Positions 5,283 through 61,386 of a DNA stretch of 64,000 nt are shown in pieces. A model generated the notes under the pieces. That model was given only the letters and a program-made list of their open reading frames with translations. It ran no database searches and was not told the DNA's origin. A program made the position numbers and the translations under genes. Source of the DNA: Dimorphilus gyrociliatus (Eukaryota; Animalia; Annelida); the NCBI GenBank assembly GCA_904063045.1, contig CAJFCJ010000006.1, positions 1,461,745 through 1,525,744 of the forward strand. Reading direction: 5' to 3'. Position 1 is the stretch's first letter; each line of letters opens with the position of its first letter.

Positions 5283-8200
5283 ATGGCGTCGAACGAAGAG
5301 GAACGAGTGGAGTTAAACGGCACCGATCTGGAAGAGGTCGTCATCGAGAGGAGAAGAGTTGCTCCTGCTTTTGAGCCGACCAGAGTTCGAGGAAGAGAAG
5401 TTCTACTCGCTATTACCGTATTTTTTATGACCTCATTATGTATAGGACTAATTGTCTGTTTAACAACTGTGAAACCGGCGTTTAGTACGGCTGAAGGTCG
5501 CAGACAAGAACTATGCGAAGATGAATCTTGTTTGAAATCTTCTGTTTATATAACGAGCAAGGCAAACTTTTCGGTTGATCCCTGTGAAAACTTTTACAAC
5601 TATGCGTGCGGAAAGTTTGAGAAAAAGAAGGCTTTTGGCGACCAGGTTGACGACGAGATCTTAGCGGAGGTAAATCAGAGATTAAGGAAGGTGATTGAAA
5701 ATCCCAAACAAAAAGATTCTGTAGTCGAAATGTATAAATTATTATACGAAACTTGTCTGAAGTCGATTGAAAGGAAAGATAGAAACCAGACGGAAGATTT
5801 TAGGAATATTTTGAAAGACCTCGGCGGTTGGCCTATATTAGGTTTCATCTTCTAAACAGCTCAATGTTACTTTTACTAATATGATAGTTTTTTAGGTTCT
5901 TCATCTGGAGGAAAGAAAAATATAGATCTACAAGAACTTCTACAAAGAGTGTACGAATTAAGACACACGGATCTCTTTTATATTACAGTTTCCGAATCGG
6001 CTTTCCAAGAGAAGAAGCAAGTGATCAAGGTCGTATAGACAGTCTTTTATATTTATTGTTTATGTACTTTGTAAGCTTATTGATCTTTATTCTTCTCGCC
6101 TCATCAACAAACGCTACTATTCACGTAGTGTGAACGCTTTCTCAGTTTATTTCGATCCTATTAAGGCCTTTGTTACCCACACTACAAACCACTCTTTTAT
6201 AATATATGCAAAAAAATTTTTATAATGAATTTTATAACCTATCTAAATGTAAAATGTATACGATCTTTATAAGATTTCTTTACGATGAACTCTAGTTGTT
6301 TTCATAGTTTTACCAGACTCATACACCATCTCTCTATACCCCCCACCTAGCCCCCCTGCCCCCTTCTCTCTTCTCTCTCTCTCGCTCGTCTTTCTCTCTC
6401 ATCCCTTTTTTATATTAGTACGTAATTCTTGATATATTTCAACAAGTAGGAAAAAAAGAAGAATTTTTTTTTGCTATTAATTTTCCATTTCGTTCTTTAT
6501 ACTTTTTGTACAGTTACCTTTGCAAAATTTAAATAAATTATAGGTTTGCTCCATATATTTACAGTTAACGGCAGTTCAGATATTAGAGAATAATTATGAA
6601 GATTTAACGGACATAATAAAAAAAATGAAACAAGCTGCTATCTCTCTAGGAAGTACATTAACTGGTAAAGAAATTGAAGAGCAAGCATTGAAAGTGGCCA
6701 CTCTTCGGAAGGAAATATATCAGGTTAGAATAATAAATTAAAAACAAATAAATGGATTTTGAAAACATTCAAGTAATTTATCTTTTCTGTAAATAGAAAC
6801 ATTTCTATCAAATACGCTATATATGCAATAATACATACATTATGTGGTTTTAAATGTGCGATATGTACTAAATATGGTTCTGAAAGGATATATATATATA
6901 TACAGTATATACTGTATATAGTATATTCATGCATATTATATATTTTTTATGTTTTTATACTTTCTTGTTGTTCATTATTCATAAAAAAGTGAAATTAAAA
7001 AATTACGGTTGAATGAAATTACCCGCATTAGAAACAAAATCAATTTAAAACATTTTTTCTAACAATTTCTTATAGATTGCCAGTAAAACTCATATAACTG
7101 AGAAAGAACAGACGATAAGCGTTTCCCGTCTGCATGAACAGTCAAAAGAGGTTTGAGAAGTTTAGAGAATTGCTTTTTTTTTCACATAATAAGTCATTGT
7201 TAGTGTATTTTTTTCTTTTCTTTTCTTTACTATATAGATCAACTGGTTAGATTTATTAAAGTTGTTCGATAAAAGTTTAACAGTGAAAAGTATCATTGAA
7301 TTATCTCCGAATTTAGAGTATTATGGGAGATTATCCGAATTATGGCGTAAAACGGATAGAGACACTCTAATCAATTTCCTCTTGTGGAACATCTTATTAT
7401 ACTATAGTGAGAAGATGAAGGACATTTCTTCACCTTTCTCACAAAATTCTAACGAAAAAGAGTCATGGAAAAAATGTGTAAATGTCGTGACCTATTCGTT
7501 CTCCTCTGCAATCGGTTGCGATTATTCAAAGACTTATGGTGGAGACTCAAAAAATGTGAGTTGCATGTAATTACTCTTTTTGCATCCCTCTCGAGGAGAT
7601 ATTGGAATGTTAATTACATAGGAAATTTATAAAGACCAAAACAATTAAAAAGTATTCAAATATGCATTAAACATTGTTACAATTTCTTGTATATATATAT
7701 ATAGATTCGAAATATCATCGAAAGTATTAGATCTGTAATGAAACAAAAAATCGAAGAGGCGAGTTGGATGGATGATAAAACAAAGAAGCGTGCTGTAACG
7801 AAGGTAGGTAGCAATTACAAATGAGTTAGATTCATAGTTCTAATTAAGTTGATCCATTGCTATACATCTATATATATATATATACATACAGTTGAAAAAA
7901 TTGACGTATAACCTCGCTTGTGAAGAACAATTTACCCTTGGAAATAAAAAGAGAATTAACTTTTATAAACACGTAAATGGAAATTGAATTTTATTAAAAG
8001 TTATTATCAATGACTAAATGAACATTTAATACTCTATTCAGATAAACTTAAAGCCTTCGGATTCTTACATTGCTATGTTGAAGAAACAGGCCAAATTTGA
8101 AATGTTCAAGATACAAAAACAAATAAAATCGGGACGTCGTACAGAGTAGGCTTGCATACCAAGTTTAATTAAAACTTCTTAGATCTATAATTAATTATTC

Positions 8201-9314
8201 TATACTTCTATGCAGGTGGGCAATATATTTATTCAGTATAAATGCTGTTTATCATTTCCAGCAAAATTGGATGGGTATGACATATACTGCAAACATTTAT
8301 ATTCTGCATATATACTGTATTTATATATACATATATATAAATACAGTGTATATACATATCCATATTTACCCAATTAACATATATTCAATTTGGTAATCAT
8401 AAACGATTAAATTGTATTCAATGTAATCTATAGCTATCGCGGCGCCCCTGCTAACAGAACCATTCTATTCTAAAACTGTACCACGGTATGTTTTTAATTG
8501 CTTTCAAATAATTATATTACTAGTTAATTACCAAACATACTTTAAATAGGTACATCAACTACGCTAAACTAGGAACAGTAATTGGACATGAAATTACTCA
8601 TGCCTTTGATGATCAAGGTAAATAAATTATTTAAGAAATACTTTTCCTTACAAAAATATTTATTCCTAACCTAATTTTTAAAATAAAAAAAGGTTCGCAA
8701 TTTGATGAGAATGGTTCTCTGAAAAACTGGTGGGATGATAGTACATTACAGATATTCCGACAAAGAGTGGATTGTATCAAAAGTTTTTATGCTAATAAAA
8801 CTTTCCGGGGACTTTCAATTTTTAATGAACAATCTTTAGCTGAGCATATATCGGATATTGGTGGTATTCGATTAGCTTACGAAGTAAGTTAGCTCCGCCC
8901 ATTGAAAAAAAAATTTGCCTACTTCTTGAAACGAAATTCTCATCTGAAAAACACTAAAAATTAGGCATTCACGAAGGAAAAGACTCACAAAATATTACCT
9001 GGATCAAAGTTACCATCTTCAGAAGAGCAAATATTCTTCCTATCATACGCCCAGAATTTCTGCTCTAAAGAGAAAGAGAGTACGACGAAGACGACCATTA
9101 CCATTGGGCAGCATTTACCTGCATCACTTAGGTATATAATAGTTATTATCAAACAATTCGAAAGCCATTTTATAAATGAAATTTAAGACGGAATTGACCG
9201 TTTGTTCTCTCCAGAGTTCTGTATAGTTTGCAACAAGTACCAGAATTCTCGAAGGCGTTTAACTGTAAAGACGCAGACGAAATGAAAGCGAGGGAACAGT
9301 GCAGTGTTTGGTGA
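5283..9314 (+). CDS. M13 family metalloendopeptidase (neprilysin/ECE-like), type II membrane, about 14 exons
   Basis: N-terminal TM followed by LCEDESC and VDPCENFYNYACG; NAVY; zinc motif GHEITHAFDDQG (about 8584-8617); EHISDIGG; C-terminal RVLYSLQQVPEFSKAFNC...CSVW*. The ATG at 5283 is preferred over the TTG at 5235. Confidence 0.95.
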
Positions 9315-9846
9315 TTATATAAATATGTACATATATATATAAATATACATATATATATATATATATATATTGTATGTATATAAGTTAATTTGTCTACTGC
9401 CGATTTTTAATGACTCTGTAATTGTTCTTTAAAGTTAATTTTAAGTTTAGATTATAACGAAAAACAACATTTTCTTAATTTGATATTACTTTCTTTCAAG
9501 TGAACTTTCATGTTGACCTTAAAAGTTTAGTTCTTATATAATTAAGAACAGGAGTGGTACGCACATTGGTTAATGAAGAAGGAAAAGTGTCATCAATTAT
9601 TCGACGCTTATGTCAATTGGCCGATTAGTATTTAGGTGTCTTCATCTAGGAATTAGCTTTCCCTTGATAATATTTTACTACTTAGTATATGAATTTCTGA
9701 CCGTTTAAAAATATTAAAAAACGCCAATAATTATATTTCGTACATTTTCATTATTACTAGTATTACAAAATATCTAAATAGATGTATTTTGTGATACAAA
9801 AAAAATTTATTTATCAGTAGACAAAGTAATTCAATTAACTAGTTAC

Positions 9847-12139
9847 TTAGTTCTTTAATGTAATGATGGGATAGTGTTTATGTACAGTAAAGTCAAACAA
9901 AGGGCGTTCATACTCCTTTTTGCCTGTAGAAAGAACGCTCATGGCAACAATGTTATATTTACAAATTCGTAATAAAGCCGTAGCTTGTTCGGTTTGGTTG
10001 CTAGGAGGTTGTTCGATTAAAGCTTTAGCGTGTTGAAAGCCTTTGCAAGCGGCTTGAAAGAGATGTTCAGGTTCGGGCACAGGTTTATATCTATTTATGA
10101 ACATATAAAAAACTTATTGAAGAAAATGAATTTAAAAAAATTACCTTTGCAAATCGATTGTGTCTGTAAAATGACAATAAGCCATTGGCTGTGGACTGCT
10201 CAAAACTTGGAAAGGTGCAAATCTCCTTCTGAATCGAACTTCTTCACTATCAAAAGCTATAGAAGATCCGTCAGCCAGCTCTAATTTTTTCGCCCTTATA
10301 AACCCAAGTAATGCTTTCAAAAATGCATTGCATAGCATTTGATGAATTTGAGCTGTATGAACTTCTTTAGCATGAGGTTTACCCTTTTTCTTCTGTTGTC
10401 TTCTCACTTTTTTAGCACTTTTGCCACTTTGAGTTTCAATCATAGCTTCACTTTCCATTAGAAAATTATCTGCTCTGGAAAGAGTAGGAATCCACCAGGA
10501 GCAGTGTAACTCACTGATATACCAATAAATATAATAATATTCTTGAGGAGAATATAATTCCAATTCAAAACCAAGATATAAATAATTAAACATTGCTTTT
10601 AGGACATGATATAAAACCCAAGTCACAAAACAAACAACAGTTTGTCCCTGCGAATTTTTCATTAGTAATCTATGTAAATAGGTGTCTAGTTTATCGGCTT
10701 CAGCTTCCAAGTTAGCCAGCTCTTCGAATATATGCGCTAACTTCTCACGTTGCCTGGCTCTATTTTGACCAGATATATTAACAAGCTGTAATATAGTATT
10801 AGCTGCTCTCTGCAGAAAAGCATCACAGTATGCTCTTGCATCTGGATTGCTACCTATACTTGATTTAGGGACTAGGGCTGGTGGTGCTATAAAGTTCCGA
10901 ATCGTATCCCTAACAACATCAACAAGAGGTTCGTTTCCAAAGAATCTTCGATTGATTGGAAATACTAGTAAGTGTAAAAGTGACCTAGATAGGACACAAG
11001 GAGACAATTTGCTAAAGTCTTCGAAAAAATCCATGGCTTGATGAAGAAAGGTGCATTTTGTTACACCAGTTATAAACTTGAATCTCGTACACATATCCGA
11101 CAGATATTTCATAGTATCTTCGATCGACGTAATTTTTGCGTATCTCGGAAATGTTGAAGGTAACAATCTTTGATTAACTAAAGGTTCAAACCCCATAATC
11201 GTTGGGTAATCGTGTAAACCACATTCTCTTTCCTCCGGCTTAATTCCTAAGTGTATAGTGCTTTGCATAGACAGTAAAACATCAAGAATACCATTAAGAT
11301 ATTTTTCTATATCATCTACTCCACTGCATTTGTCTTTAGAGAAAGCCAACAGAGTTGCATATAGAAAACGAGTGAATTTAATACGTGAATAAATAGCACT
11401 ATAAAGTTCGTGCTGCTTTGCTCTTGTTTCGTTGTCTTCGCCTTTGTCTTTTGTACTCCTAACTTTCTTTGCAAACTAAAATTTAAGACATAAGATTTAA
11501 ATGCGATCAGAATATATTATTATTAAAATTTATTAAAACTGAAAATTGTGGGCCATTTACCTCATCTTCCACTTCCCGAAGAGAAGAAATAACTTTGGCA
11601 CTGGGTACTTCGCTTGCCATCTTGAAGCCATACGAAACAGATTGAAAATCCTCCTCCTCGAAAACGCTTGCCTTGTTTATACGATCCCTAATTAAATCGA
11701 CTGTCTTGAGTATGGCCGTGCAAAACGATTTTAAAGTTTTATCTTTTATAGCCTCTGGGTTATGCAGATACAAATTAGTGAAAACTGTTTGGGCTAGAGA
11801 ATGCCCTTCTAACCAAGTTACCACACAGGCGTACGTTGAATCAATAATACCGATTAGTTCTTCACTTTCCAGATTATCATCTTTTATGATATTGGCTTTC
11901 AAAGCTTCATCAAAATCATACACTTTACGCTTAACTTGATTACAAAGCATTCCAGCATCCATTTTCGGATCCATCATCTCGATAGCCGACATAGCTTCGA
12001 ATAAACCAAAATGAACATCGTGAACTAATTCCCCCACATTTAATTGTTGACATAATTCAAAAAAGTCCTTTGTTATATCTTTCCAATTACAATTCTTCTT
12101 CTCTTCCAGAGAAGGGCCATTATCATCGGTTTGCGACAT
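9847..12139 (-). CDS. NAA35: N-alpha-acetyltransferase 35, NatC auxiliary subunit (Mak10); exons 12139-11561, about 11478-10146, about 10090-9847
   Basis: FGLFEAMSAIEMMDPKMDAGM, WLEGHSLAQTVFTNLYLH, LGFELELYS.EYYYIYWY and C-terminal FDFTVHKHYPII are characteristic Mak10 motifs. Confidence 0.96.
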
Positions 12140-20431: not shown

Positions 20432-21494
20432 GGAATTGGCGTGACTTGTTGCTAGATAAATTTAGTTTTCTCTGTTTAATTTCGATTACCTGTGTATATC
20501 TGCATACATTTGCGTATGCATACAGGTTAGCATTGCGTAGAAACGGCCACCGAATTCTCATACATATATAATTATCTGCATATCACCGACGTTATATGCG
20601 CTCCCACCTATTTTAATATATAATTTAGACGTGAAAATGTACGTGCCAAACGTAAAATATATATATTTAATATAAATATATAAGCATATATATAGAATAT
20701 ATATATTGGTATATAAACCTATATATTTTTTTGTCAAAAAATATTTTTATGTCAAATATTACTTGTTAAGTGGTAAACGAGAATACTCCTCTTTCGCTTA
20801 ACATATCACCATATCGTATATTCTCTAGGTAGGTTCGTAAAGCGTTTCTATGGAGACGTCTTTAGGATGCTAAGTATACTTAGTTTTGATTTCAAAAGAA
20901 CTATATATACTGTATATGTGTCATATGCTCTCTTAACTGTATTTGGAGACTGAATTTGACTCGAGTTTCTTTGTTATGACAATCGCATAGATGTATGAAA
21001 ACTAAGCAGAGCTTCCGGTTTTTCTCCAATCGATGTGGATGTTGAGTAAACATATAACACGTAATGCTTATAGTGCATGGTGAAATATTGCTTTTGTATT
21101 AAGATGTACGCCGAGAAATTTTGGCCCTTTAGGAAAAAATAATTTGTAAAATACTATATACTTCAATATACTTGACTTCTATATAGAGAATGTATTTCCA
21201 TTAAATTTAATTAAGGTCTAATTTACTTTTACGTGATCTTGCTAGCTCAATTAACGCAAATTAGACGTCGCTATCGGAACGCTCTGGTGTTTCATACCTA
21301 TCGCGACATTGATTTTAGTCTCTCAGCGTCGCTCTTTATTTTTCACCCCAATCGTTAAACCGGGCAAAAGCTTAGTGAAATGTAAATAAAAGAGGTGTGG
21401 ACGTATTTTTGTGTAATATTTGCCTTGGCCTGTTTGCGTAAGAAAGTAGTAAAACGAGGTTGAGAATTAGCATGTATTCCTTTTTTTTTTCAAG

Positions 21495-28532: not shown

Positions 28533-31120
28533 TCAGACGTCTCTGTAAGGAAAGAGTTTAGTGTAATATCGTGGGAGGAAATTAAGTATATGTCACAAAA
28601 AAAAAAAAAAATACTGCTGAAAATTAGTGCTTTTCAGTACATATTCGTAGGAGAGTGAGGGGGTGGAGAATGTTGGAAGGCGGTGAAGGAGAAGAATAAG
28701 AGAAATGGGTGGACACAAAAATTACGGACTTGGTACGAAAAAAATGACTTAGTACTAACGAAGCTTCGAGGTGAGAGTCGTGAAGTAAGCGTAGAACTTC
28801 CTTTGGTGATATCTTTCGCTTATGATCGTCGGTATGTAGACTAGCGGGAGTAAAAACGTTTGTTGACGAAATGAACGAGCTGGATGCTAATGAATGAGAT
28901 AACGTTGTTTTATCCTCTTCCCCTTTCCCATTCCATGAATAGCGTTTTTGGATAGCACATTCCGGTTTGGGCGGTTGATTTAAGTCATGAGTAGTACTGG
29001 CAGTCCAATAACGTTTATCTCTGGACAATCGTCGATGGTTTAATTTCGATTTCGTTTCTTCGTCTATGCAGTCCAAATCGGAAGATGAAGAACTGACGGA
29101 TAATCGATCGGTTGCGAAGACATGCCGTAGTTGATCTATCCTTGGTGAAAGTTGTTTGTTCCTGGCTCCACTCACAGTTGCTGCTCTTGACCTGATTTCT
29201 GTTTGTTCCACATGGCCGGATGAGGACGTGTCTAACAACTCCATACTCATACTGACATTATTTGAAAGTCTTTCTGCCGCTTTTTCTTCTAACGCAACCT
29301 GAGATAAAAGTTCTGTGGAACTAACCTTCTCACTAACAGGGTATTCCATAAGGCTAGAGTTTCTCCTCCCACTCCACAATTCTACATATGCTTTTTTGGC
29401 GTTCGTTATATCTTCGTACCATTTACTGTTGTTTGCAGTAAAAGTGTAGACACAATTAACACAACCAAACTCATTAATATATGCTAAAGAGAACATAGTA
29501 TCTTTGAGAAATATAGGCTTAACCAAGTCTAACCTCATGGGTGGCTTGATTACCCTAACTCTACTTTCCGCTTTTTTCGAGCGTTTCGCGACTAGAACGA
29601 GATCGGTGAATAGAAAGAGTATAATTTCTTGCGATTTTACGCTCACGCCTTCTTTCATCTTTAGATATCCTTCTTTGATTAGACGCCTCCTATAGTGTTC
29701 TCCGCAAACCGCCATAGGAGAAGAAATATCATATTTTAAGGCGTCTTGTAAATGAAAATACACTTCTTCCGGATGAGTGTCTATTAAATCGAAACTTTCT
29801 ATTCGTTGCGTAATATTAAGTAATTTGGCCTGTTGATCATGTATTTGTATCTGTTCATTTACTGAACTTACAAAACTCTTAATACGATTTAAAGTCAACC
29901 CTAATTTACGTTTGTCGCACTCATCGTCGGTACATTCCAATAATCTTTGTAGAAGTAAAACGTGCCGTGTTATATGTTGCATAGGACTGCTTAAATAACT
30001 AGCAACATCCAATTTGTTCAAGTTCGTATGACTATTCGCCCAGGTATAGAATTTCTGAAAGGCTGTATTCCTCTCGCGTTCCTCATTGATGTATTCCTTA
30101 CATTTTTCCATTTTAAGATTATATTGATATTCTTCTAAGAATAGATCTCCGAATTCGTACAATTCTTCCAAACTAGCTGAATTAACAGGTCTCTTACTCT
30201 CTCGTATTTTTCTTATAAAAGGCGATATGACGTCATTCCACCTCCTACAGCATTGTACATAGACGTCGTTTAGATTGAAAACGATTTTGTCAATATCAAC
30301 ACCTCCTAATAAATGTTCATTCGTCAAATGTCTTAACGGTCGTACGAATACGTCAACTATAATTTTTAATTTAAGAGCATAGTTCGCCTCGAAGTGTAAA
30401 ATTTCCCACACTACACTTTGCTGCTGGCGTTCGCTCTTTGATAGGCCTTCATCAGATATTACAGCATTCCATTCGGATTCTAATTCGATGGCTCCGGGAT
30501 CAAATTCCAACGATTCGCTACGTTTTGGTAAGCGTTTACCAAATTCAGTAAGGCGTCTGGTAAGGGCATCATCAATCCCCTGAGATCTTATTTTTAATGA
30601 CGGTGAACCTTCGTCGTCTGATTTACGATGCTTGTTGGTCTTTATAAAAAAAAGATAAAAAATTATTTAACTGAACCGAAAGCGTATAGCAAAGTAATAT
30701 AACAGCAGAAATCAATTTCTCAATGAAACAATAAGGAAAAAAGAACTGAAAGAATACTAAAAAAAGGCCAATTAATTAAATATATATAACATATATACTA
30801 TATATATATATACACATTTATATATATATATATACTGTATATATACATATGAATAAATAATTATATATATATATATATATATATATAACCATACGGATTA
30901 TATAATCTATTAAGATAGAGTTTACATTTCTATATTAGAAAAGTCATAAATATTTAAGACGACAATCTAAAACAAAAAATAATAATAGAAAAGAAGCTTT
31001 TCCTACTGTTTTAGGTCTTTCATTAACTTTTTGAACCTTTTTAGACGCCATACTTTCGTCAAAATCAACAAAAAATTGTAAGGCATCTCGCTGTAGTTTA
31101 GCAATATTCGTCGCCGACAT
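28533..31120 (-). CDS. DH-PH Rho guanine nucleotide exchange factor, PLEKHG5/6 (Syx)-like; exons 31120-31007, 30639-28760, 28542-28533
   Basis: DH reads QQSVVWEILHFEANY...PMQHITRHVLLL; PH reads RRLIKEGYLKMK...LFLFTDLVLVAK...IKPPMRLD. A terminal micro-exon gives ...LEASDV*, a class I PDZ ligand like PLEKHG5 SEV. Confidence 0.88.
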
Positions 31121-32659
31121 CGTTCGATGTACAACTGACGTCGAATTCTAGCGAAAGCGTCTCCTGACGTCACTAAACTCGTACTCGATCAACTATTATC
31201 GGTGATATATATATATATATATATATATATACACCGTATATACTAAAATATATTTCTACACATATATAGACTATATTCTGAAAATCGAATGCTTATTTTT
31301 AGATGACCTAAAAGTAATAATTCTAGAGTTTTTAAAGGGTTCTACCTAAAAATGTATAGGATATATAAGTATATATATCAATATATACTAATATATACAT
31401 ATATATTTCAATTAAAATATCTCTATTCCCTCATTTGCATCACGAGATCGTGAAAGAAAAAACGTATATTGTATACATAATATTGTATACTCATATAAAT
31501 TTATTCAATTTGATCTTTTTATACATTTAAAGCACGCCAACGCAAGGTGTCACCCTGGGGAATTTCAATCGCCTAGTAAAATAGCGTCTAATTTCCACAA
31601 ACACTTCTTTACAGGCCCATATCTAAAATACAAAACTATTTTATAAGAAAATAGGAGAAATATACGGTAGAATTATAAGATTCGTGAGTAATTGCCAGAA
31701 AAACTTGTCTTAATTGACGTCTCACTTTTCAGTTATAGGTAGACGCATCTCTGTTATTGAGTGGAGTATTAGGAAATATGTAGAAAAGTGATATGAAAGT
31801 GTGGGCGAGGTCAAACTCTCGAGTGCTCGCATCGGTAAAACATCTCTTGTCATTAATACTAAAAGAACGGATCATTTTAATAAGAACATATTTAAATAAA
31901 TAGTTGACTAAGGCTAAATTGTAATTTTATAGTTTTCACAGTATTTTAAGCAGGTGCCATCTGGTGTTCGCAAAAAGTTTACAAGCTTTAAATTAGATTG
32001 TAATACAACAACCAACCTAACAATATAGCCTTTTTCCAGTTCAACAGTTTTGTTATGACTCGACCTATTGTAGGGAATAATAACTGTGGCGTTTGATTAT
32101 TGACAATTTTGTCAGTTTTTAAGATAAAAATCTCTAATAATATATAGGACGTAATAAACCATTTGTAAAATTAGATGAAGACACTAATAAAGAGCCAATG
32201 CATTAAAACAGAAAGAGGTCTAGTTAAAAGATATCAGGTTGCTAACGAGCAACAAAATATATTCTGATACAACGATAGAAGCAAATTCGTATCTGTTTAC
32301 GGTAGAAAAGTAAAATTGCTATACAATACCAACGTCAAGCCAAGTTACCTACATTCAAACAGTCAATAAGTCAGGTAAATAATAATAGAAATCGTTAATG
32401 AAAGAAGATATGTCCATAAATGAACAATTCTTTAATCTCTTTTATAATCTATTCTCCTTTCCTTAATTACGTATAGATGGACAGCAAAATTGAGTATACT
32501 CCTATAGTGACGTCAATTAACTCTTCCCACAGGGTAGAGTACGCATGCGCCCTAAGCCAAAATATTCTATACTTTTCTTTTTTTGACAAGATAAAAATAC
32601 AACAATTGTGGAAAATTACAGTTCAATTGAGCCCTTTACATAAATAAATAAATATACAG

Positions 32660-32691
<32 letters not shown>

Positions 32692-33508
32692 CGTACAATA
32701 ATTACAGAGTACTAGGTTAAGAATGGAGATATAAAAGAAATGAAACTAATAAAGGATTTAATCATTAAATTATAAATATAATGCTGCTGTGGAAGTATAG
32801 ACTATAAATATATTCTAAAAAAAAAAAAAAGAAAAAAAAAGATCTTTAAAAAACAAACAAAAGAAAATCTATAAAAGCTTTAAAAACACTTGGAAAAGAG
32901 ATGTTCGTTTTATTATCTTGATATTAATTTTTTAAAGCTTAATTGTTATATTTTTTGAATAGATACTCAAAAATCATAGTCATAACATGTGACTGAAAAC
33001 AAATATGAAATATGATGCTTATATCTAACACTAACCGTTAATTAGACTGTTAGGTGAGATTGAATTAATACGGGGGAAAAGGGATACATATATAAATTTA
33101 TACTTTTTATATGTTATATATTCTATTATATATATATATATATATATATATGTATAGGGTTTTTTTGAATTTTATTCAAACGAATATATATCTATGATTG
33201 GCAGAGAGAGAGAGAGAGAGAGGGAAATGCTAGCTTAATTATTGTCATATTTTTAATAATGAAATTTTTGAAAGATCGTAGGAAAAAACGAGGGCAAGGA
33301 GGACCCTTTCAATTCTTATTATACTTAAAATAAATGAATATCACATAGAGACAACGGAAAATCTTTTACAAATGCTAATCTTTTGAAATAATTGCTAATA
33401 TGTTAAATAATAGTAGTTATATACCGTATATACTAATATATACAATATATATTTAATATATATCTATCTAGTAATATACAAGATACAATATATAATATAA
33501 CATATACT

Positions 33509-33822: not shown

Positions 33823-36800
33823 GCCGTATCGCTAAATGGGTAGCGATAAAGAATCTTTAAGGTCGTATAAGTGTTTATATTGTATGTATAACAATATAAC
33901 AAAAGTTACGTATTCCAATATATTATTAATATACGTCTACTGTAATATATATATTTATACACAAATAATATAAACTTATATGTATATACTGTTAAATTTT
34001 TCTATTTATATAGTTTCATTTATTTAAATATACTGTACATACGTATATAACTAGAACACTTTTTTTTTTACCGTTTTGTTTTTTATTCGATGGAAAAAAA
34101 CTTATCGTTTTCTTGGCAAAATCATAACTTCCTTCCGGCGATAAAAACATATCCACGATGGTAAGAAAAATGTATCGGTTTGAAGGAAGCTATGTCATAA
34201 ACATCTGCGAGGCATCAGCTAATTTTATAGCGTCGTTTTGTAAGGGAAGCCAGTTAGTTACACGACTGCAATTCTAGGCCTATCATATGTTGAAAATCGT
34301 TGATAGATATTCTTAAGGATTAGAGTGAGGGTGGCAGGGAAAGAAAGTGTATGTCTATGTGTGTATGTATGTATGTGCAAGAGAGAGAGAGAGAGAGAAT
34401 GAAAAAATTAGAGGTGAGAGAGTGGAAGAGTGCGAGAATAAGAGAGTGAGAGGAAAGTGAGAGGGGAACGGAAGAAAAAATATAAAAGAGAACGGAAAAA
34501 TTCTATTTTTTTTTATTCAGTAAAGAAAATGAAAAGAGAGTAGAAGAAGAAGAAAAAGAAGAAGAAATAAGAATTAGATCGTGTATGAACCAAAAGAAAA
34601 GAGTACATTCTCTGTTGTCTTACTCTACTTTAGAATATTTCATTTTAGTAACCATAAAAGAAAAAAAATTTCTTCTTCTTCTTTTAACCATTCGGAGTCT
34701 CTTTTTTTTGTTTTATTTTTAATTCTCGTTTCGTTTCCTCCCCTTTCCTCTTTTCCTGTTTTTTTATTATCTTTTTTTGTCTCTTCAAGGTCTCAAAATA
34801 TTAAAATCGAAGAAAAAGAAAGAAAACGAAATATAAAAGAAACAATTATTCCTATTATTAAGCCTATTCTTAAGGAATCAGTATATGAGACTATATAAAG
34901 TATATATATATATATGTAATATACCGTATATCTAGTACATGAAATTATGCTGAAAGTTAGATAATGAGAGTGAAAAGAAAATTAGAACGCCATCTACAGA
35001 CTACAGTAAACACTAGTGTTATTATTTTAATCCTTAAAGATTGTTTACTGACGTCCACATCTGACACGTAATTGATTTCCAATGAATTATATATCTTAGA
35101 CGATCTGTCGCGTTATCAAAAAAACCTGTCTTGCATTCTTTAGTGTTTTTATACTCTTTTCTTTTATTTTTAATTTAAATTGGAAGACAAATCTTTTTTC
35201 ATAAGGATATCTCATGTCCTTAACTATTGTTATTTAGTTTATAAGTAATATATATATATATATATATATATATACTGGTATGTAAAAGGAAATAAATTAT
35301 ATTGGTAATAAATTAAAAAAAGATTACTAAATTTAATAGTAAGTTGTCAAGGGCTACCTATTTAGAAAGGTGTCGACTGTTGACCGACTTTTAAGTCAGT
35401 TAACTATAATATTAGAATATAATATATAAAGTTTTAGTAATATTTTTGTTATCAATTTTATAAACTGTATTAAAACCAACTTTCAGCTTTTACTGTTTAA
35501 ACTTTATAAGAGAGGATAGAGATAGTGAAAGAGAGAGAGTGAGAGATTGAAAAAAAAAAAAAGAGTTAAATTTGTACGCCTACTACACCAATAAACAAGT
35601 CATAGATATTTTACAGTTAGATAAAAAGAAGGAGTGGAGGTGAGAGAAAATAGCGGAAAAAGAAAGAAAGAATGAGAGAGAGAGAAAGAAAGAAAGAAAA
35701 GGGAAATAAGAGAAAAAAAGAAAAGAAAAAGAGTCTAGATGATGAGAAGAAAAGAATGGGTCTATAATATAAGTTTAAATTAAAATATATTCTCTAAATA
35801 AATTTTACGGGGTTAAGGCGCATTATTCAAATTGACAATGAAAGGAATTCTTATTCAATCTCGTTTTTTAATTGAAAATAAGCTAACAAAAAATATGACA
35901 ATAATGAACTATAGTTAAAATTTTATATATATATTTATATATATTCATAAAATTGACGACAATTCTTAAGCAACCAATTAAAATCTAATATTTCAAAATT
36001 TTAAATAGATAATTAGATATAATTATATAAACAGGAAGGACTATATTTAAAATAGAAATTTTTAATGGAAAATATAAGCTTTTTGTACAATTGTAACATG
36101 ATTCATTCCAAAATTAGCTACTAAAAATAATAACACACTCGTATTGACAGAAAACTTGTACTTTAAATTAAAATGATAGGAAATTATGTAAATAAATCCT
36201 TACCTTAGTTTTTATCATTTCATTATTTAAATGTTTCCAATTCATTTAATATGAATTTCTGAATTTATCCTATGTTTATTTATAGTGATAAACTTGTTCA
36301 CATTCCTCTTTTTTAGCACAAAATAGTAAATATGCCGTACAACCTATATATATATATATATATATAAATATAGATATATACAGTTTACTATATACTGTAT
36401 ATATATATAGATATATATATAGTGTCGTTAAAAAATTTTTGTTGATATCATTTATGACTTTGTTCTCTCTCCCTATCTTACTAGTGAATACATACAGTAT
36501 ATATCTATTCTTTTCTTAAGTAATTTTAAATTAACAATAACACGTATTAAGTAGACTTAGACCAGTTAGGGTGTTTTTTTATTTAGTTTGCTAATTAATA
36601 GGAAAATAGAAGTTGAATAGGAGTTTGAAATATAGAAGATTTAGATTATATACAAATAAAATCTATATTTAGGCCATCTTGCAATCTCGTTTTAACTTTT
36701 CCAACTTAAAAGTGCGTTGAAACCTTGTCAGAAGGAGAGGAAAATACATTTTTAATGAGATTTGTGACCATAGGAAATTTTCTGGATATATACAAAAATC

Positions 36801-40629: not shown

Positions 40630-41351
40630 CAATTATATGAATGATACAGGATAAATATTTCCTCTTATTATTACTAATAATGCCCTTTGAAGTGACGACT
40701 TTTTTCAAAACTCGGTTACTACGCAACTGAATCTGCTTGTAGCACCATATTTTTTTGTTGTTAAAATAAAAGAATAGCAAAAAATTTCACTTTAATTACA
40801 AAATTGTTTGCATGAAAATCAAACTTGCTGCAATTATATAATAAATAAGTATGTATATATATATATAGATATCAATAAATAGCATCAAACTATATTTCAG
40901 CTCTATTAATAGATCTATAAGAAGTAGAAAAAAACGGTTATTGAACAATCGTAAGGCTGAAACTGTTGGTCAAAAAAGGGACTTAAACTTTTTTGTTTTT
41001 TAAGGAACTTTAGTTTAGAGAGCACCGTATAAAAGAAAACAAAATAATTATATATACACTTATCAATACATGTATGATTTCAATACAGTGATAAAAATAA
41101 AATCATATTTTCTCTTTTGATTTCCTTTTGAATAAATATTTCATATTCGTATAGAACGTTTCATCTTTTTCCCCCTTTTTTTTCAGTTCTAAAGCTACCT
41201 CTTATCTTCTTTCCACCTCTTTTATAACTCTCTTTGTTTTTTACTTTACTTTACTTTATTCCCTCTTCAATCCTTTTTCTCCAAAAAATAGGATTTTGAC
41301 CTCTTTATTGATAAAAATAAGCAAGAATAATAACTATATTATGTATAAATA

Positions 41352-41384
<33 letters not shown>

Positions 41385-41433
41385 AATACTGTATATATGT
41401 TATACTCTTCTCATTTCTTCTCTTTAATCGTCT

Positions 41434-42723
41434 TTACAAATCGTATAAAGAACACCAAAAATTTTCACCACATTCCGAAAATGTTAGTTTATGTAAGCAT
41501 TCCCCGAATAATTTGTTTGTTATCTTTTTACATTTCTTGACTTGAATATGCAAAGATAATTGTGTCTTGTTAACTGGACTAAATACAAACATTTCGTTAA
41601 AATATGTTGTTTGTTCATTTTGTTTTTGATTGAATGTACGTCGTTTTTCCAAATGAAATTTTGTATCGTCATCTAACAGTCGAATTTGAACGAAAAATTC
41701 TGTATATGAGAAAGGAAAGGAAAAAGTAATGGGTGCAAGTTAGTTCCCAGATGCGTAATCTATGTAAATGTCATATCAAATTCGTTGAATGTTACTAACC
41801 GCTTCTCTTCCTTCTACCGAGCGTTTCCAACCTAATAACGGAAACAGTAAGCTCCTGGTCGAAAATAATGTTGATTAATAGCAAACCAGAAGGAAGCCTG
41901 CCATTTTCAAACGATTGAAAATCTATTGGAATACTAGACGATAATGAACTCTCGCTGACGTCATCGGGTACTGTAAGAAAAAGACAGTATATATTTTAGA
42001 AATAGAGAAAAGCTTCCAGAGAACTTCACTTTTAAACGTGATAAAAGAACTTACAAGGTTTTCTATTGATAAAAAAGGTGAGTGAGGCAGATAGGAGATA
42101 AATAGTGAGAGAGAGAGAGAGAGAGAGAGACGAAGAAAGAAGAATAATGATGATGACGATGAGGAGAAGTGGAGAAATTTGGAGAGAGAGAGAGAGAAAC
42201 ACACACAAACACTTATAGACATACAGAAGTTATTTTTACTGCGCGTTCAGGACTTGTAAGCTGTTTTGAAAAGCATGCAAAGTTTTAAAAAAAGCATTCT
42301 ATTATATGCATATATTATCTTTAAAATATATCAAAGAAATAAGCAAATAAACTAGATCTAAAAAGAAGATATACAGTATATACAGTAAGTTATAATTATC
42401 ATACTTTTACTTTTATAAATAAAGACTCTCATAAAATAATTGCTTTTATACTAATCATCAAAAAGACAAACATTCTGTCAATGCTACCAATTTAGGTATT
42501 TTTATGAAGAAGTCGTTATGTAAGTTTTTTTTCTATTTGCAAAATTAACTAGAAGAAAAGTATTACTTAAGATATTTCCTCAGGGCTACATCTCTCCTTT
42601 CATTTTATCCTTTTATATTATTTTTCTAGTTCTTTATTTAAGAATAGAATTTTTGTTTATAACTCTTGGACTTTTTCAAATCCAGTATTAACATTCCGTA
42701 TATACATATACTCTATACTGTAG

Positions 42724-42755
<32 letters not shown>

Positions 42756-43013
42756 TATATATTTAGATCTACAGCATTGATACAAGATTTTTGCACTCTG
42801 TTAAAATTTGGAGGCAAAATCTTTAATTTAGAAAACATGCTTTCTACTTGCTTATACAGGTGAAATATATAAAAGATTTACAAACAGAAATTCATAAAAA
42901 TTGTAAAAATAAGAAATCTTTAAGTAATTGCTTGATAACAGTAAGAATTAATCATAATAAAGAATTATCAGTGCTTAAACTTTGAGAAGAAAGAGAAAAG
43001 ACAAAGAAAAAAG

Positions 43014-43055
<42 letters not shown>

Positions 43056-46000
43056 AGGAAGGAAAGAAATTAGACATATTTATAGATGTATTATTCTATA
43101 ATTAGAAATAATTAAAATTTAAGGTAAAGACTCTTTACTTAAATACGATGGTGTATAAATATAATAGATAGAAAATATACAACTACTAATAAAAAGGTGA
43201 ATAAAGATATATAGTTAAGAAAAATTAATATACAGTATATATATATATATATGCTGTATAAAGAAGAAAAACAACAACAACGAGGTGTACCGGTTTAATG
43301 TTTTTTTTTTTGGCTTATAGGATAGTTTTGTTACTAGATTTTTATGAGGATTAACGCGCTTTGTGTGCAGTTATCATCCTTTCATCACTTTCTTCACATC
43401 TGATTAGGACAAACGTGAAGGCGTAATAGGGAAAATGGTATTATACAAAATAATATAAATACTTGTTTACATATTATATACATTATATACAAGAATTGTA
43501 AAGATTGTTTATCTTACAAAATTCTCCTTATTTATTCAAAGTTAAAGTACTATAGCCTTATTTTAATTAATAGATGATAAAATAGAGGACTTTTATTTAT
43601 ACTAACATATACTGTATATATATAGTTTATATGGAGAATACGAAATCTAGACAAACTCAAATATTGTTTGTCATATGTTTTTCTGTTAATACATAAAAGA
43701 GATAAGCACATAATAGTCAACTATGATAAATTGTAAATCTGCTATAGGGAAAGAGAAATTCTTTTAGAACTTATATTTATATATAATTCATTATAATAAT
43801 GCTTTAGCTAAACTTACAAGCAACAATTTTGTTTTTTAATCTGGTCTCGTTACTGCTTCGCCTTTGCACTAAATTAAAATTTTCTTTTAACCCTTTAAAC
43901 GGATGAACTGGGGGATAATATCAGCTCTTAATGTATCAGTAAAGGCTTCTATATGTCGTTTTTAGTTTTAACTTTATCTTGATAATCTTTTTAAAGAAAG
44001 CTAGTGTCTCTGCTTTTCCGGTATCATCTGTACAGTGGCCCTACAAGAAAATTACTCTATCCTCTTTAAAGTTTTTATCAATTATATGGCGAGTTATCGG
44101 GGTTAATAAGCATGAGTTTGTTTTAAATATAAGGAAAGAAAAAACTCATTTTTTTTTAATTTGCCTGATGATTGATGGTCAGGTGCAGCTTCTATTCATT
44201 GACTTTTGTTATTCACAATATAGGGAAATACTTTAACCTTCTTCATACCAACAGATGATATAGTTATTATGTGATAATCTCTTATATCTAATCACAAAAA
44301 CAATAATGACAAACAAAATTTCAGTATGTCTTAAATACGTTTCTTATTTATTATTAATATGTTATTTCGTCCTAGTTTTTCCCATCAAAGTTTTATTTTC
44401 TAATCATCCTATTACTTTTGTTAATTTATTTACTAACCTGACAAGGTTGGACCTAAGAAACCAGCTAAAGTCGTCCCCATCCTTTCGACGAAATTTTCTG
44501 TAAATTGATATTTAAATTAGGAATTTGCTTCATTTAATTAATAGTAGAAGGCTGTATGGTGCCACATATATTAGATACGTTTAATTTGAATTTTTTTAAT
44601 TAAGCGAAAGTTACGAAGATACATGATTGATTAAATAAAAGGGTATTATATATTTACAGTATATATATACTGTATATAACACCTATAATTATAATACTGT
44701 TGATTGTTGATTAACTTATAAGAGTTCTTACTTTCTGCGGGTTGTTGAGGGTCTGGTTTCAAGTCCTGGGGTTGAAGGGGTCTTCTACCGTGTGCAGGAC
44801 TAAAATTTGCATTTGATGGTATTGATACAGATTGAGTCGATTGGGTAGGCACCGTTGAAGCCTGAGAGGCAGCAGCAGCAGCAGCGGCGGCGGCGGCTGC
44901 AGCGGCTGCAGCGGCAGCAGCCGCTTTTGCTGCCGGAGCGTTACTGGCAAAAGCTGGATTCATAGGCGGTTGGTGACGATTTGTTCTAGAAACAAGTGTT
45001 GGAGTCGGTTTGTGAGGCTCGTGTGGCTGTTGAGATTGCTGAGGTGGAGCACCGTGTGCTGGATTGAACGTTCTCTCTTGAGATTTTGATCTTGTTAAAT
45101 GCTGTGGCATTTGGGGGGGGTTAAGACCTGGTGATCTCTCTCGAATTTGAATATCACTGCGACTCCTTTCCCTACTACGGTCTCTCATCATTCTATCATC
45201 TTCGTACCTAGACGACGTGTGATCGTGAGAGCGAGATCGTCGTTCCCGATGATCCATCGGTGCCGAAGGGGACCTACTTCTATGCGTGTTCAAGACAGGA
45301 TCTTTGTAAGGCGTATGTCTTCTAAGAGGCCTTTCTTCGTAGTAACGATCGTCGTGCTCATAATTATTATAGCGTCTACTATTATTATAATAATCATCTT
45401 CGTAGTCATGATGCTGAGTGGGTTGAGAAGGATGATTAGAATGATGCCCTTGAGAGGATCGCGGCCTTTCACGCTCTTGATAGCCATTCCGCTTTCTCGC
45501 TTTTTTCTGTTCATACTGCTCTTCTGGTACTGTTTGATAATTACGGTCGTCATAGACCGCACTTGCGTCAGATCGGCGATGATTCCTCCTCCTGTCATAA
45601 TATTCCCCTCCTTCATTATATTCATCTTCAAAATGTGTTCGCCTTCGGCTGACTTCTTCACTTCTGTGCGGTACGTTGTCGTACGTAGACTGAGATTCAA
45701 CTTTTCGAACATCCTCCTGCTTAGAATGTCGCGGAGAAGAAGTAGAATGGCTCTTGCTTCTCTTCTTTTCTTTCTTCGGCTCTGGGGGCGATGGATCCAG
45801 CGGCAAGTCATTTGGATTCTTCTTCTGTTCGTGTAGTTTGTACCAGTGGGGCTTGTTGTCCAAATAGACTTTATCTAATTATACGAAAAACATTTATTAC
45901 TGCGAAATTACGAGTAAATAAAAAATATCCCACTTGATAAAGGAAGGACAACTTCCCCAATAAAGTCGTCACTCTTAAATCGGTCGTGGTCATATACCGC

Positions 46001-52878: not shown

Positions 52879-54091
52879 TTTGGAGCCTCAGTTCAGTGTA
52901 ATCCTATCTTTGCTCCAGGAGCCTCTACACGTTCAGCGCGGGGACTGCATCCCGCTAATGAGCCTCGGTTTGGCCATCTGACGTCATTGCAGGGGATTCC
53001 AGATCGACTGCAGTCGCTTTTTATTGATTGGTGCACTTTAGTGCGTTACAACGTTTCTATCGATTTGACGCTTTTAATAGACGTCGAATGTTTTTGTTAC
53101 TAAATTTAATTTGAATAAAAGTCTTTTTCGATATACTAAAATAGTTAAATAAGCCACATGTAAGTTTTTTTAATGTAATACACAAAAAGAGGCCCTATAT
53201 ATTCTCCCGCCTAAACAATATGGCGTAAAATCACGTGACCAGATTAATCATTACAACTTTTTTTCTCTTTTCGCAGAGACTAATATTATATGTTATGCAC
53301 ATATAGTATATTTATAATATTATTATAATATTATATAAACAAGATAAAACAAATGGAAATCATTGAATTAATGTCAGAATAACAAAGAATAACAAATTTT
53401 AAATAATAATAAGTTTAAATTTAATTAGTTAAGAGAGACAGTTTTTCTCTTTCTCTCTCTTTCTCTCCCTCCCCCTCCCCCTCTCTCTCTCTCTCTCTCT
53501 CTCTTTTACAACATAATTATTCGATCTAATGGGAATAACTGAACTACTAATTGTTTAATAAGCAGGATATCATCAATTTACTAAAATTCTATTTAAATAT
53601 GACTTTAGAAAACGGATACTCTATTAAATCTTCCTTAAAAGAAAAGTAGTAAATAATTCTGTTGATACACCAGTTCGACGACCATTGAATAAATCTTTGT
53701 ATATTAATAATTAAAGGCTAGAGAAATGTTTCCTCTTATATTTAAATAACAAAAAAAAAGTCTCCTTTTTAGGGCAATTTTCCACCTTTTTTCAATCAGA
53801 TTATATAATCAGTTTTTTAAGCTATCAATTTTAAACAGTCATTGTAAATTATAAGTATAAAATAAATGGGAAAACTACATAGTTTTGTAATTTATAATGT
53901 AAATCTGTAGTTACTAGTGAAAATTCTGCTTATGAATAATATTTTAGATGAGGTTCGGCGGAATTATATTCGCTTTTCAAATTCGTTTAGTCTTTTCTCC
54001 GATAACATTACTTATTTTTTGCACTTTTTTTAGTCATTGAATCGATTTTTGATCTATCTTTTCCTTTCTCTTCGTTCCTATCATATATACA

Positions 54092-54134
<43 letters not shown>

Positions 54135-55388: not shown

Positions 55389-55501
55389 TTTTTTTAATTA
55401 TTCGATACTAAATCAATCTGCATCGGTCGATTTTAACATGTTCAGTTGAAATTTAAATGCATATTCAAGTTATGCGCTGATTTCTACCTATTTTGAAGGC
55501 G
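55389..55501. promoter_or_regulatory. Candidate bidirectional promoter between orphan (-) and CCDC50 (+)
   Basis: 113 nt separate the divergent ATGs. The call depends on the orphan being real. Confidence 0.4.
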
Positions 55502-55953: not shown

Positions 55954-55993
<40 letters not shown>

Positions 55994-58171: not shown

Positions 58172-58222
<51 letters not shown>

Positions 58223-59385
58223 CAATAACAATATTATTATGAATGTTTAGTTTGTTATTAATTTCCTTAAAGACCAGTTTTCTCTGTTTATCTATCAAAA
58301 TATCAATTTTGATGCTGATTGGTAATAATAGTGTTTTTCAAGCTAATTTCTTTTATCTTACCTTTCATAATAAACAGCTGAAAGCTGGTCAATCCACTAC
58401 TTTGAACAATGAATCGAATTCATCAAGTTCAATGCTTGATATCGGTTCTGTTACTTTTGGGGGAGAAGCTAGCAAATCTCATCGACCAATACCACCTTCA
58501 TACGAGGAACATGTTCGCCGTCACGGAGCGAAGCCTTTGCCTTCCTCTCCTATTTACGAAAATCAGGCTGTCTTTGATAACAGTCAATCTGAGTCTTCTC
58601 CTGAAGCGATTAGAGAAATGGGATCGGATGAAGAAGTTCCTGAAATGATCTCTCAATGGGAACGAGCTAACTCACCAAAGCGACCAATGAGTGAGTTGGA
58701 TCGTGCTAGAATGTTATTTAGCTCGGAATCAGCTGAAGAAGTTAAAGGAGATGTCAGAAAAAAAGACAGACGATCTAGAGAAAATACCAAACAATTATAC
58801 TCAAAGCCGGGTAAAGATAGACCCATCAGTGTAGCTATTGGCGCATCGGGTCATTACGAAGAGTTTCCATATCGTGAGAATGATTTAGGAAAGGGTAAAC
58901 GATCCAAGTCTTCTGATCGATTGGATAAAGCAAGATCCAGAGCTCCCATTACCGTAAACCGATTAGAATTGGACAACGGAACTCTTGATGACAATCTTCT
59001 TAGCGATAACAGGTTTTTCTAATTTGTTTTTTTTTTCTTCTTATTTAAGCGTTCTTGTAATTCTGGTATGTTTTTGCTCATCAATTTAGAAAATCCCACC
59101 GTCCACTTCCACAAGCTCAAAGGTTACCCCAAACGAGTACCAACGTCTTTTCAAGTATAGATCCTACATATCGTCGCCAGCATTCAGTCGAGCAGGTTTC
59201 GACAGGTACTATTAATGCATTGATTATATACACTATCTTATAAATTAATGATATATATAGAAATGGATGAAGAGAATCTTTATAGTGAACTCATGACTCC
59301 TCCATCATCTCCTGGTTATGTGCAGAATGATAAAAGAACTTCGGAACAAGCTAAAAAGAATAACTCAAATTGCAAACAGCAATAG
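55502..59385 (+). CDS. CCDC50: Coiled-coil domain-containing protein 50-like (multi-exon)
   Basis: The N-terminus SVNEVRRQFGIHEDRQLAHKLQENE...RKDVPMAK matches the CCDC50 N-domain. Repeated DEKLAKKL / DQELARLLQDQE / DLEIAKLFQEQE MIU-like motifs follow. The last exon ends NSNCKQQ*. Confidence 0.85.
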
Positions 59386-59783
59386 GATAAATCATGTCAG
59401 AACAAACGGATCTACAAACAAATTTTTTACTTGGCAATTGTTAATTACGTAATAAAGAAATTTAAATGACATAATCTCGACTTTTTGTTCTTATATTATC
59501 TTATATCGATTTTTTTTACCGGCTAAGCTACATTTCCTCCCTCTACCGGTTTTCAGAGAGAGCATTCTGCCAGTCGTGACGTCATTCGATGCATTTTCAT
59601 TTGCAATTGCGCAAATATTACTGCGCTCTCTCCTCGTCAGTTACTCCGCTTTGAGTCATTTATACGATGATTACACCAGTTTTTTTGGAAGTCTAAAGTT
59701 GTCATAAGGCCAAGAGTTGTTGTTAAAGAGGTGCAAAATTCGGTTATGCTTAAAAATACTAACAAGTCAGTTAGAAAGAAATA

Positions 59784-61386
59784 ATGGGAGGCGAAAGTAG
59801 CAAGAGGTGTGCCAGTGTTGGTTCAGTAAGTTACACAAGCAGCGGTTGTGTTGATTTTCCGAATCATTTCCGAAAAGAGACAGAAGCTGTGGCATGGACC
59901 TTACTTCATCAGTGTTTGCTGGACAAATGGAAGGAAGGACATGCCGAAGCTGCTGGTTTTAACGAGGTTACTCTATCCTGCACAGGAGTCATAAATAAAG
60001 ATTGCTCAGATTCCTTCTGTGTTTCAAGGCAAGGTATTATCAACGTGTATAAGGACAGTTCCTTTTTCAGCTTCAGAAAGCGTTCAAAATTTGCTAAAAT
60101 GGCTGATCACTTTGAATACAATCACATTCCGGCACAGCTATCGTCCGTCCATCACTTGAGAGTGTTGTCCGTCCTTTGCTACCGTGAAAAATTGGTTGTC
60201 CTACACGTTTCAAGGGCAGGGCGCTCTCAATTAGGCCTACTAGATTTAAAGGCGAATAAATTCCTTGGCGTTTTCGCCCAATTAGCGCCTTCCTTCGAAC
60301 TGTCCAACAGGGACGTGAGAGCGTCTCTAAGTCCGGATTGCAGCCGCTTGCTGGTTCTAGTTGCGCGTCCTGTTAGGGAACTTCAATTATACGATACGAC
60401 CAAGAAAATGCTCGTTGCTCAAATGGGTATTTCTGGCCCCTCGCACTTCTCTTTCGATCCAAGATTTGGTTGGACCCGAGCGGCGATTACATCATTTGCT
60501 GAACCCAATAATTTAACTGTTCTTAATTTAAGGAATTGTAAAGTGTTAGCCTCGAACAGCAGGTTCTCAGACGATAACCTCGAGCCCAAGGATACTCGTC
60601 AAATACGTCATACACCGGATGGTAGTCTACTTATCGTTAGTATGGTTCAGTCATCATGCGCTTGCGACGGTTCCGCCCGTCGGGCTAATATCTACGTATT
60701 TTGTTCGACAACTGCAATTACCCTGCACTGCGTTCTCTACGATCGATATACCTGCGCTGTGTGAGAATTTCTTTTTTTCTTTTTATCGCCTATTCATATT
60801 TTTAAGTTTCTAGGAAAAAAAAAGAAAAAAAAAACAGACGGCTTAAGTTAAAAAGTTAATTCAATTTTTATCAAGTATTTCTTGTTTCAGTCATGCCTGC
60901 CCTGTCAATTACACGCCAGTCTTTAGTAATTGCGGAAGTAGAATGGCCCTTGTTATGAATATGTGCGGTGTAAAGAACCAGCATTACGTTCAAGTAAGTT
61001 TATTATAATTATTATTATTATTATTATATGATTAAACCTTCTGTTCATTTTATTTATAATGTTTATGATTCATAAATTTATGTATATTGATAAAAATTAT
61101 AAATAACACTGTATACTGTATACTGTATATATATATATATATTTATTTATATATATCATTATACTTTATTTATGAAAGAAACGTAATAACGTGAAAAAAA
61201 ATCTATACAATTAACTTATAAAACGTCCTTTTATAAAAATAATAACAGGTTTACAAACTGCCAACATTCGCCAATTTGCAGCATTTTTGCCGAACAGTAA
61301 TTCTACAAAGTTATGTCGATGTGACAAATTTACCTCTACCGCAAAAGATTATCGATTTCCTTCAATTTCAACCAGAATTCGAATAG
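59784..61386 (+). CDS. Beta-propeller-like protein with C-terminal SOCS box; exons 59784-60760, 60891-60993, 61249-61386
   Basis: Beta-strand repeats (LSPDCSRLLVLV, FSFDPRFG, HTPDGSLLIV, PVFSNCGSRMALV). The last exon LQHFCRTVIL...LPLPQKIIDFLQF is a canonical SOCS box. The N-terminus is MGGESS. Confidence 0.8.

What the first reader, a model, noticed from the sequence alone, without database searches (positions are those of the whole stretch)
6899..61129. Window-wide scar field: TA-CAG-TA / TA-CTG-TA inserts in (TA)n tracts resemble Tc1/mariner excision footprints, with no transposon left
Seen: the 11-mer TATAC[A/T]GTATA occurs at least 14 times (6899, 6908, 20906, 30831, 32653, 36391, 41350, 42370, 43229, 43608, 44666, 54086, 61112, 61119). 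All copies are intronic or intergenic and most are at the edge of a TA run. A rough base-composition estimate expects well under one copy, although TA runs raise that null. Known: Tc1/mariner elements with CAG termini (e.g. Sleeping Beauty) target TA, prefer (TA)n, and leave TA-CAG-TA or TA-CTG-TA on excision. Inference: the genome records many past cut-and-paste excisions while no transposase or long TIR element is visible here. Alternatively the motif is a conserved protein-binding element that seeds TA expansion.
Basis: partly seen in the sequence, partly recalled or inferred. Interest (0 to 1): 0.85.

Follow-up and report, generated by a model that had tools for sequence, protein, structure and literature searches.

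The report
Transposon exit scars in worm genome
The non-coding DNA of the tiny worm Dimorphilus is peppered with a short mark identical to the scar that some cut-and-paste jumping genes leave when they jump out, suggesting tens of thousands of past jumps in a genome now poor in such elements, although the element responsible was not found.

Summary
Observation confirmed: TATAC[A/T]GTATA occurs exactly 14 times at the stated positions, none in long ORFs. It makes up 14 of 36 three-base interruptions of TATA..TATA (expected 2.3%, p 3e-14); shuffles keeping TA runs give 0.45. The window is Dimorphilus gyrociliatus. A sister lineage about 80% identical carries the same motif (14 in 38 kb) but elsewhere: four reference copies with anchored orthologues are absent there, and it has its own. 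Capitella, Paralvinella and Tribolium loci show no excess. This argues against a conserved binding site or a generic TA-run effect. The motif equals the Sleeping Beauty-type Tc1 footprint, and a third of reconstructed targets are ATATATAT. Best reading: germline excision scars of CAG-ended Tc1/mariner-superfamily elements (about 0.7). Not shown: a donor element, a filled allele, a clean 5-bp indel. The published genome lists Mariner at 0.85%, termini not given. The scan noted this motif before in many other windows of this genome; no paper describing it was found.

The parts
6899..6918 (.). Two motif copies (CAG form 6899, CTG form 6908) in one TA run, intron of a neprilysin-like gene
   Evidence: sister lineage has TA-rich DNA without the motif here
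20906..20916 (.). CTG-form copy in alignable non-coding DNA
   Evidence: absent at the anchored orthologous site
30831..30841 (.). CTG-form copy in a long TA field beside the RhoGEF coding exon
   Evidence: sister contig stops short of it
32653..32663 (.). CAG-form copy opening a run of 14 TA
33420..33430 (.). Variant with CCG core (point mutant, or scar of a CCG/CGG-ended family)
   Evidence: only two in the window
34920..34930 (.). Second CCG-core variant
36391..36401 (.). CTG-form copy upstream of the GnRH/AKH receptor-like gene
   Evidence: region not alignable to sister, which holds seven 7-mers in the same 1.9 kb
41350..41393 (.). CAG-form copy plus a CTG 7-mer at 41387 on the far side of the run; probably 3' UTR
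42370..42387 (.). CAG-form copy followed by a second CAG 7-mer at 42381, intron 42261-44437
   Evidence: intron from RNA joints
43229..43239 (.). CAG-form copy before eight TA, same intron
43608..43618 (.). CTG-form copy inside the left arm of an old inverted repeat; the right arm lacks it
   Evidence: arms only about 75% alike, so suggestive
44655..44676 (.). CAG 7-mer (44655) and CTG-form copy (44666) in the 234-bp intron 44498-44731
   Evidence: sister intron has neither motif nor TA run and is about 17 bp shorter here
54086..54096 (.). CAG-form copy opening a run of 19 TA
   Evidence: sister contig ends just before
61112..61129 (.). Two CTG-form copies at 7-bp spacing (61112, 61119) after a degenerate third; short intron
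   Evidence: sister has its own CAG-TA-CTG cluster at about this place, orthology unclear

Best explanation
The motif is the repair scar of cut-and-paste DNA transposons of the Tc1/mariner superfamily whose ends read CAG...CTG. Steps: (1) the element inserts at a TA, by preference in the middle of ATATATAT, duplicating the TA; (2) the transposase later excises it with a 3-nt staggered cut; (3) end joining keeps three terminal bases, leaving TA-CAG-TA or TA-CTG-TA, a net gain of 5 bp; (4) scars in exons are purged, those in introns, UTRs and spacers drift to fixation; (5) the flanking TA run can slip and be hit again, giving compound arrays. Shown here: the sequence, its excess, its context, its lineage turnover. 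Known from Sleeping Beauty: steps 1-3. Inferred: that a Dimorphilus element did this, and steps 4-5.
For: Exact match to the two canonical SB footprints (10.1101/659086; PMC8151067). TA is needed on both sides: 19 of 28 TATAC[A/T]G are followed by TA. Removing 5 bp gives ATATATAT in 12 of 36 non-coding 7-mers against 5% of TA sites, the SB consensus target (PMC8934666). Five-fold lower density in long ORFs. Same excess in a sister lineage at different places: gains and losses in both directions. No excess in two other annelids and a beetle, one with 24 TA runs and no 11-mer. Dozens of other genomic contigs match the motif-plus-TA stretches but share no flank (agreement about 0.5), so no element body. 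The genome holds 0.85% Mariner and Mariner-like MITEs and intact double-strand-break repair (PMC7854359).
Against: No donor element, terminus or transposase was seen. No orthologous site shows a clean 5-bp indel; flanks are too diverged or the TA run itself differs. No polymorphism in public runs, which are one culture and whose contigs break at TA runs. SB's minor footprints (CA/TG, C/G cores) are not clearly in excess. Clustering beyond TA context is not significant (p 0.115). In rice, natural excisions are mostly messy (PMC4423477). An unchecked scan note puts Tc1 copies of this assembly on a parasite contig, so the Mariner share may be overstated.
Confidence: 0.7

Rival explanations
1. A transposon-independent mutational or repair process at TA runs (cruciform breakage, template switching, slippage of a 5-7 bp unit) creates and copies the motif.
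For: TA runs and motif often arise together in one lineage; 7-bp periodic arrays (61112, sister L003 and L006) fit slippage; CAG...CTG pairs form perfect palindromes, as fold-back copying would give.
Against: Such processes copy local flanks and give no reason for one fixed core at scattered loci; the equally palindromic G[A/T]C core occurs 3 times, A[A/T]T 3 times; a Paralvinella locus rich in TA runs has none. It may explain the arrays, not their seed.
Confidence: 0.15
2. A functional protein-binding or RNA motif with rapid site turnover, kept by selection in non-coding DNA of both lineages.
For: Present at similar density in both lineages; palindromic around one base, as for dimeric DNA binders; concentrated in the long non-coding regions around neuronal genes.
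Against: 0 of 4 reference copies with anchored orthologues are kept while nearby non-coding blocks are near identical; sister copies are absent from the reference; the genome paper's passages on open-chromatin motifs name CTCF (the figure with the top ten could not be read).
Confidence: 0.08
3. The copies are surviving termini or collapsed remnants of a MITE or pogo-like family whose ends begin CAGTA, rather than excision scars.
For: TA plus CAGTA would give the same 7-mer; the genome has MITEs.
Against: No shared sequence follows the core, no TA-flanked inverted-repeat pairs in the window or sister loci, and most copies have TA runs on both sides.
Confidence: 0.04
4. CpG decay of TA-CCG-TA / TA-CGG-TA (scars of a CCG-ended family or another motif) produced the CTG and CAG forms.
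For: One transition links the forms; two CCG 11-mers in the window, two 7-mers in sister arrays.
Against: D. gyrociliatus has 0.16% 5mC and CpG observed/expected 0.9 (PMC11292947), so there is no accelerated decay; C[A/T]G outnumbers C[C/G]G 14 to 2.
Confidence: 0.03

Closest known systems
Sleeping Beauty (Tc1 family, DD34E) canonical excision footprint
   Same: Identical 7-mers TACAGTA and TACTGTA; TA on both sides; ATATATAT target preference.
   Different: Known from engineered mobilisation; here natural, fixed, about 16,000 11-mers per genome by extrapolation, with no donor identified. The share of ATATATAT targets (33%) is nearer SB mutants H187V/K248R (21-39%) than SB100X (2-3%), though genome composition and later slippage differ.
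Tc1/Tc3 and mariner-type footprints
   Same: Same superfamily chemistry and TA target.
   Different: Tc1 and Tc3 leave 2-bp cores; CA/TG cores are not in clear excess here (11 against 14 AA/TT).
Natural excision sites of Mariner/Stowaway elements in rice genomes (PMC4423477)
   Same: Excision recorded by comparing orthologous sites of sister genomes.
   Different: There only 8 of 94 excisions were clean and none had a fixed terminal core; here one uniform core dominates.
Microsatellite-associated MITEs of plants (e.g. PMC8449440, abstract only)
   Same: DNA transposons tied to TA microsatellites.
   Different: The elements are still present there; here only putative scars are seen.

Membership tests
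SB-type Tc1/mariner excision footprint | Core of three terminal bases, CAG or CTG, between two TA | tested here: met
   39 7-mers, 14 11-mers
SB-type Tc1/mariner excision footprint | Duplicated TA required on both sides | tested here: met
   19 of 28 left halves and 18 of 32 right halves completed by TA
SB-type Tc1/mariner excision footprint | Reconstructed target fits the AT-repeat consensus | tested here: met
   12 of 36 ATATATAT against 5% background
SB-type Tc1/mariner excision footprint | Lineage-specific presence, depleted in coding DNA | tested here: met
SB-type Tc1/mariner excision footprint | Net 5-bp gain relative to the empty allele | tested here: inconclusive
   reference longer by about 17 bp at the double site 44655-44676, about 13 bp at 43608 against the other arm; no clean case
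SB-type Tc1/mariner excision footprint | Filled allele (element present) at the same site | tested here: inconclusive
   none in four runs over 40700-44800; one culture, contigs cut at repeats
SB-type Tc1/mariner excision footprint | TA-targeting family with CAG termini and DDE/D transposase in the genome | not testable with these tools
   none in window or 6.8 kb beyond; paper lists Mariner without termini; no genome-wide search available
SB-type Tc1/mariner excision footprint | Minor footprints (CA, TG, C, G, CG cores) | tested here: inconclusive
   counts not separable from point mutations in TA runs
Conserved cis-regulatory site | Positional conservation in a sister lineage | tested here: not met
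   0 of 4 anchored copies kept; one intron ambiguous
MITE / TIR element ends | Shared sequence beyond the terminus and paired inverted ends | tested here: not met

The most novel reading that the evidence does not exclude
Dimorphilus genomes carry a countable fossil record of tens of thousands of germline excisions by Tc1-like elements that outnumber the surviving copies many-fold and kept forming in both lineages after their split; repeated insertion-excision cycles purged elements, seeded TA microsatellites and drive turnover of the non-coding DNA in one of the smallest free-living animal genomes.
Probability: 0.35. Interest if true: 0.7.

Novelty: new variant of a known kind. Interest (0 to 1): 0.5.

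Why it matters
The scar itself is textbook, but lost transposons normally leave no count. If the reading holds, a simple word count gives a genome-wide map of past cut-and-paste activity in an animal described as almost devoid of TEs (4.87%, PMC7854359), which makes it testable whether TE depletion in compact genomes means few insertions or many insertions followed by excision, and whether excision builds TA microsatellites. No paper describing this signature was found in ten library searches, which is limited evidence since most subscription journals are missing.

Tried and rejected
Search for TA-flanked inverted-repeat elements and Tc1/mariner catalytic motifs in the window, sister loci and 6.8 kb beyond the window: nothing; Pfam on unexplained ORFs: no transposase. 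Read laying on 40700-44800: X1 identical to the reference, X2 and X5 turned out to be RNA, X6 a bisulfite-type run, and repeats were skipped, so no allele test. Sister samples compared with each other are more than 99.9% identical, no polymorphic scar. Clustering and edge bias looked striking by eye but were not significant. A recollection that a salmonid transposon paper had counted such footprints was checked and is wrong; a frog genome paper was irrelevant. A first alignment script timed out. A cyprinid locus, taken as a positive control, gave only 1.9-fold, so it neither supports nor refutes.

Full report
Source. The Naa35/Mak10 ORF at 10141-11349 clusters with DgyrCDS4533 of the miniature annelid Dimorphilus gyrociliatus, and another window ORF is an exact protein of its 5.5-Mb scaffold. 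The window is gene-dense, 33% GC, with neprilysin-like, Naa35, ionotropic receptor, RhoGEF, GnRH/AKH receptor-like and Piccolo/RIM-like genes.

Observation. The 11-mer occurs 14 times at exactly the listed starts. An order-3 Markov model expects 0.33; the 7-mer core is the most over-represented word after pure microsatellites and A runs. With TA context fixed, 14 of 36 non-coding TATA-NNN-TATA have CAG or CTG where trimer frequency predicts 2.3% (p 3e-14), and shuffles that keep TA runs whole give 0.45 on average, 4 at most. No copy is in about 19 kb of long ORFs; the 7-mer is at 0.80 per kb outside and 0.16 inside (the coding mask is approximate). Ten of 35 runs of five or more TA carry the core at an edge. 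Two of three interruptions in the next 6.8 kb of the scaffold are again C[A/T]G. The apparent clustering and edge bias are not significant.

Anatomy. The core is an odd-length insertion that shifts the TA phase, so substitutions alone cannot make it. Both flanks must be TA. Nothing else is shared: flanks differ within the window and among the dozens of other genomic contigs that match these stretches. Removing core plus one TA restores ATATATAT in 12 of 36 non-coding cases against 5% of TA sites. Four compound arrays occur in the window and five in the sister loci, in same and opposite orientation.

Comparison with a sister lineage. Public runs SRR23372228 and relatives encode orthologues about 90% identical in protein and 76-84% in DNA; their label was not shown, a cryptic Dimorphilus lineage is my inference. 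In 38 kb they hold 14 11-mers, with a 5.2-fold 7-mer excess in the first 28 kb. Where orthology is anchored, reference copies 6899, 6908, 20906 and 44666 are missing in the sister; 43608 lies in DNA the sister lacks. Conversely the sister has copies right after a splice donor near 61000, in the intron before 58363, in a receptor intron that is about 580 bp there and about 80 bp here, and near 53260-53500, where the reference has none. One intron (61000-61250) has clusters in both at about the same place; these may share an older scar. Neighbouring non-coding blocks are near identical between lineages, so the motif behaves as mutation product, not as constrained site. No case is a clean 5-bp indel, because the TA-rich flanks change too.

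Controls. Loci from Capitella (2.0-fold, not significant), Paralvinella (0.7-fold, 24 TA runs, no 11-mer), Tribolium (1.2-fold) and a dace (1.9-fold, p 0.016, no 11-mer) lack the strong signal. These are single loci of 23-61 kb, so they show only that the motif is no general by-product of TA runs.

Mechanism. Sleeping Beauty excision by 3-nt staggered cuts and end joining leaves TACAGTA or TACTGTA and prefers ATATATAT. I know no other process that writes this fixed core between duplicated TA (own knowledge). The genome has Mariner (0.85%), Mariner-like MITEs and the double-strand-break repair genes. Extrapolation gives about 16,000 11-mers or 35,000 excess 7-mers per 73.8 Mb, against roughly 500 full-length equivalents of Mariner sequence. 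A rough estimate of mine, with assumed rates: scars would be under 1% of the substitutions since the lineage split and need only about one excision per copy per few hundred thousand generations, so the number is not implausible. The missing links are the donor family and a filled allele; neither could be searched genome-wide. An unchecked scan note places Tc1 copies of this assembly on a microsporidian contig, which would make the published Mariner share a weaker support; another reports a 5-nt footprint causing a frameshift in a pseudogene, which would be stronger support. I tested neither.

Rivals. Transposon-free repair or slippage can copy a scar into arrays but does not explain one fixed core (0.15). 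A binding site fails positional conservation (0.08). Element termini fail for lack of shared flanks (0.04). CpG decay from CCG cores is unlikely in an unmethylated genome (0.03).

Novelty. The footprint is known; its natural accumulation as a leading non-coding word of a TE-poor animal genome was not found in the papers searched. The scan has noted the motif in many other windows of this genome; those notes show it is genome-wide as seen by readers but are no independent support. Verdict: real, most likely Tc1-type excision scars, confidence 0.7, interest 0.5.

Noticed in passing
window 43564-44418: Old inverted-repeat element of about 850 bp (arms about 200 bp, core 43649-43715 / 44265-44331 79% alike) inside an intron; the sister intron segment is about 710 bp shorter and lacks it. 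No clear target duplication, no ORF, no high-copy match in reads. Possibly a decayed Mutator-like non-autonomous element.
   Followed up: partly
window 43371-43461: Conserved block inside the RNA-defined intron 42261-44437 of the Piccolo/RIM-like gene, with an acceptor on the minus strand: probably an alternative terminal exon.
   Followed up: no
window 31201-31240: A run of 13 TA flanked by CGGTG and its complement CACCG, an unusual near-palindrome.
   Followed up: no
window 7690, 7869, 9332-9369: TA runs without the core that are absent from the sister lineage at anchored positions; could be plain slippage or core-less TATA footprints that expanded.
   Followed up: partly
window 52290-52490 and 21170-21300: Non-coding blocks almost identical between lineages otherwise about 20% apart; the first holds an inverted pair (52318-52334 / 52390-52406), a candidate RNA structure or regulatory element.
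   Followed up: no
window 58266-58290: Short conserved block in the intron before 58363, perhaps a micro-exon or branch region.
   Followed up: no
L001-L007, L012, L013: Runs SRR23372216/28/29 and SRR31984831/34 hold a lineage 76-84% identical to the reference and nearly invariant among themselves: a likely cryptic sister species useful for whole-genome comparison.
   Followed up: partly
window 50684-51685: Glutamine/histidine/proline repeat exon (9-bp units) in the Piccolo/RIM-like gene, only 65% alike in the sister.
   Followed up: no
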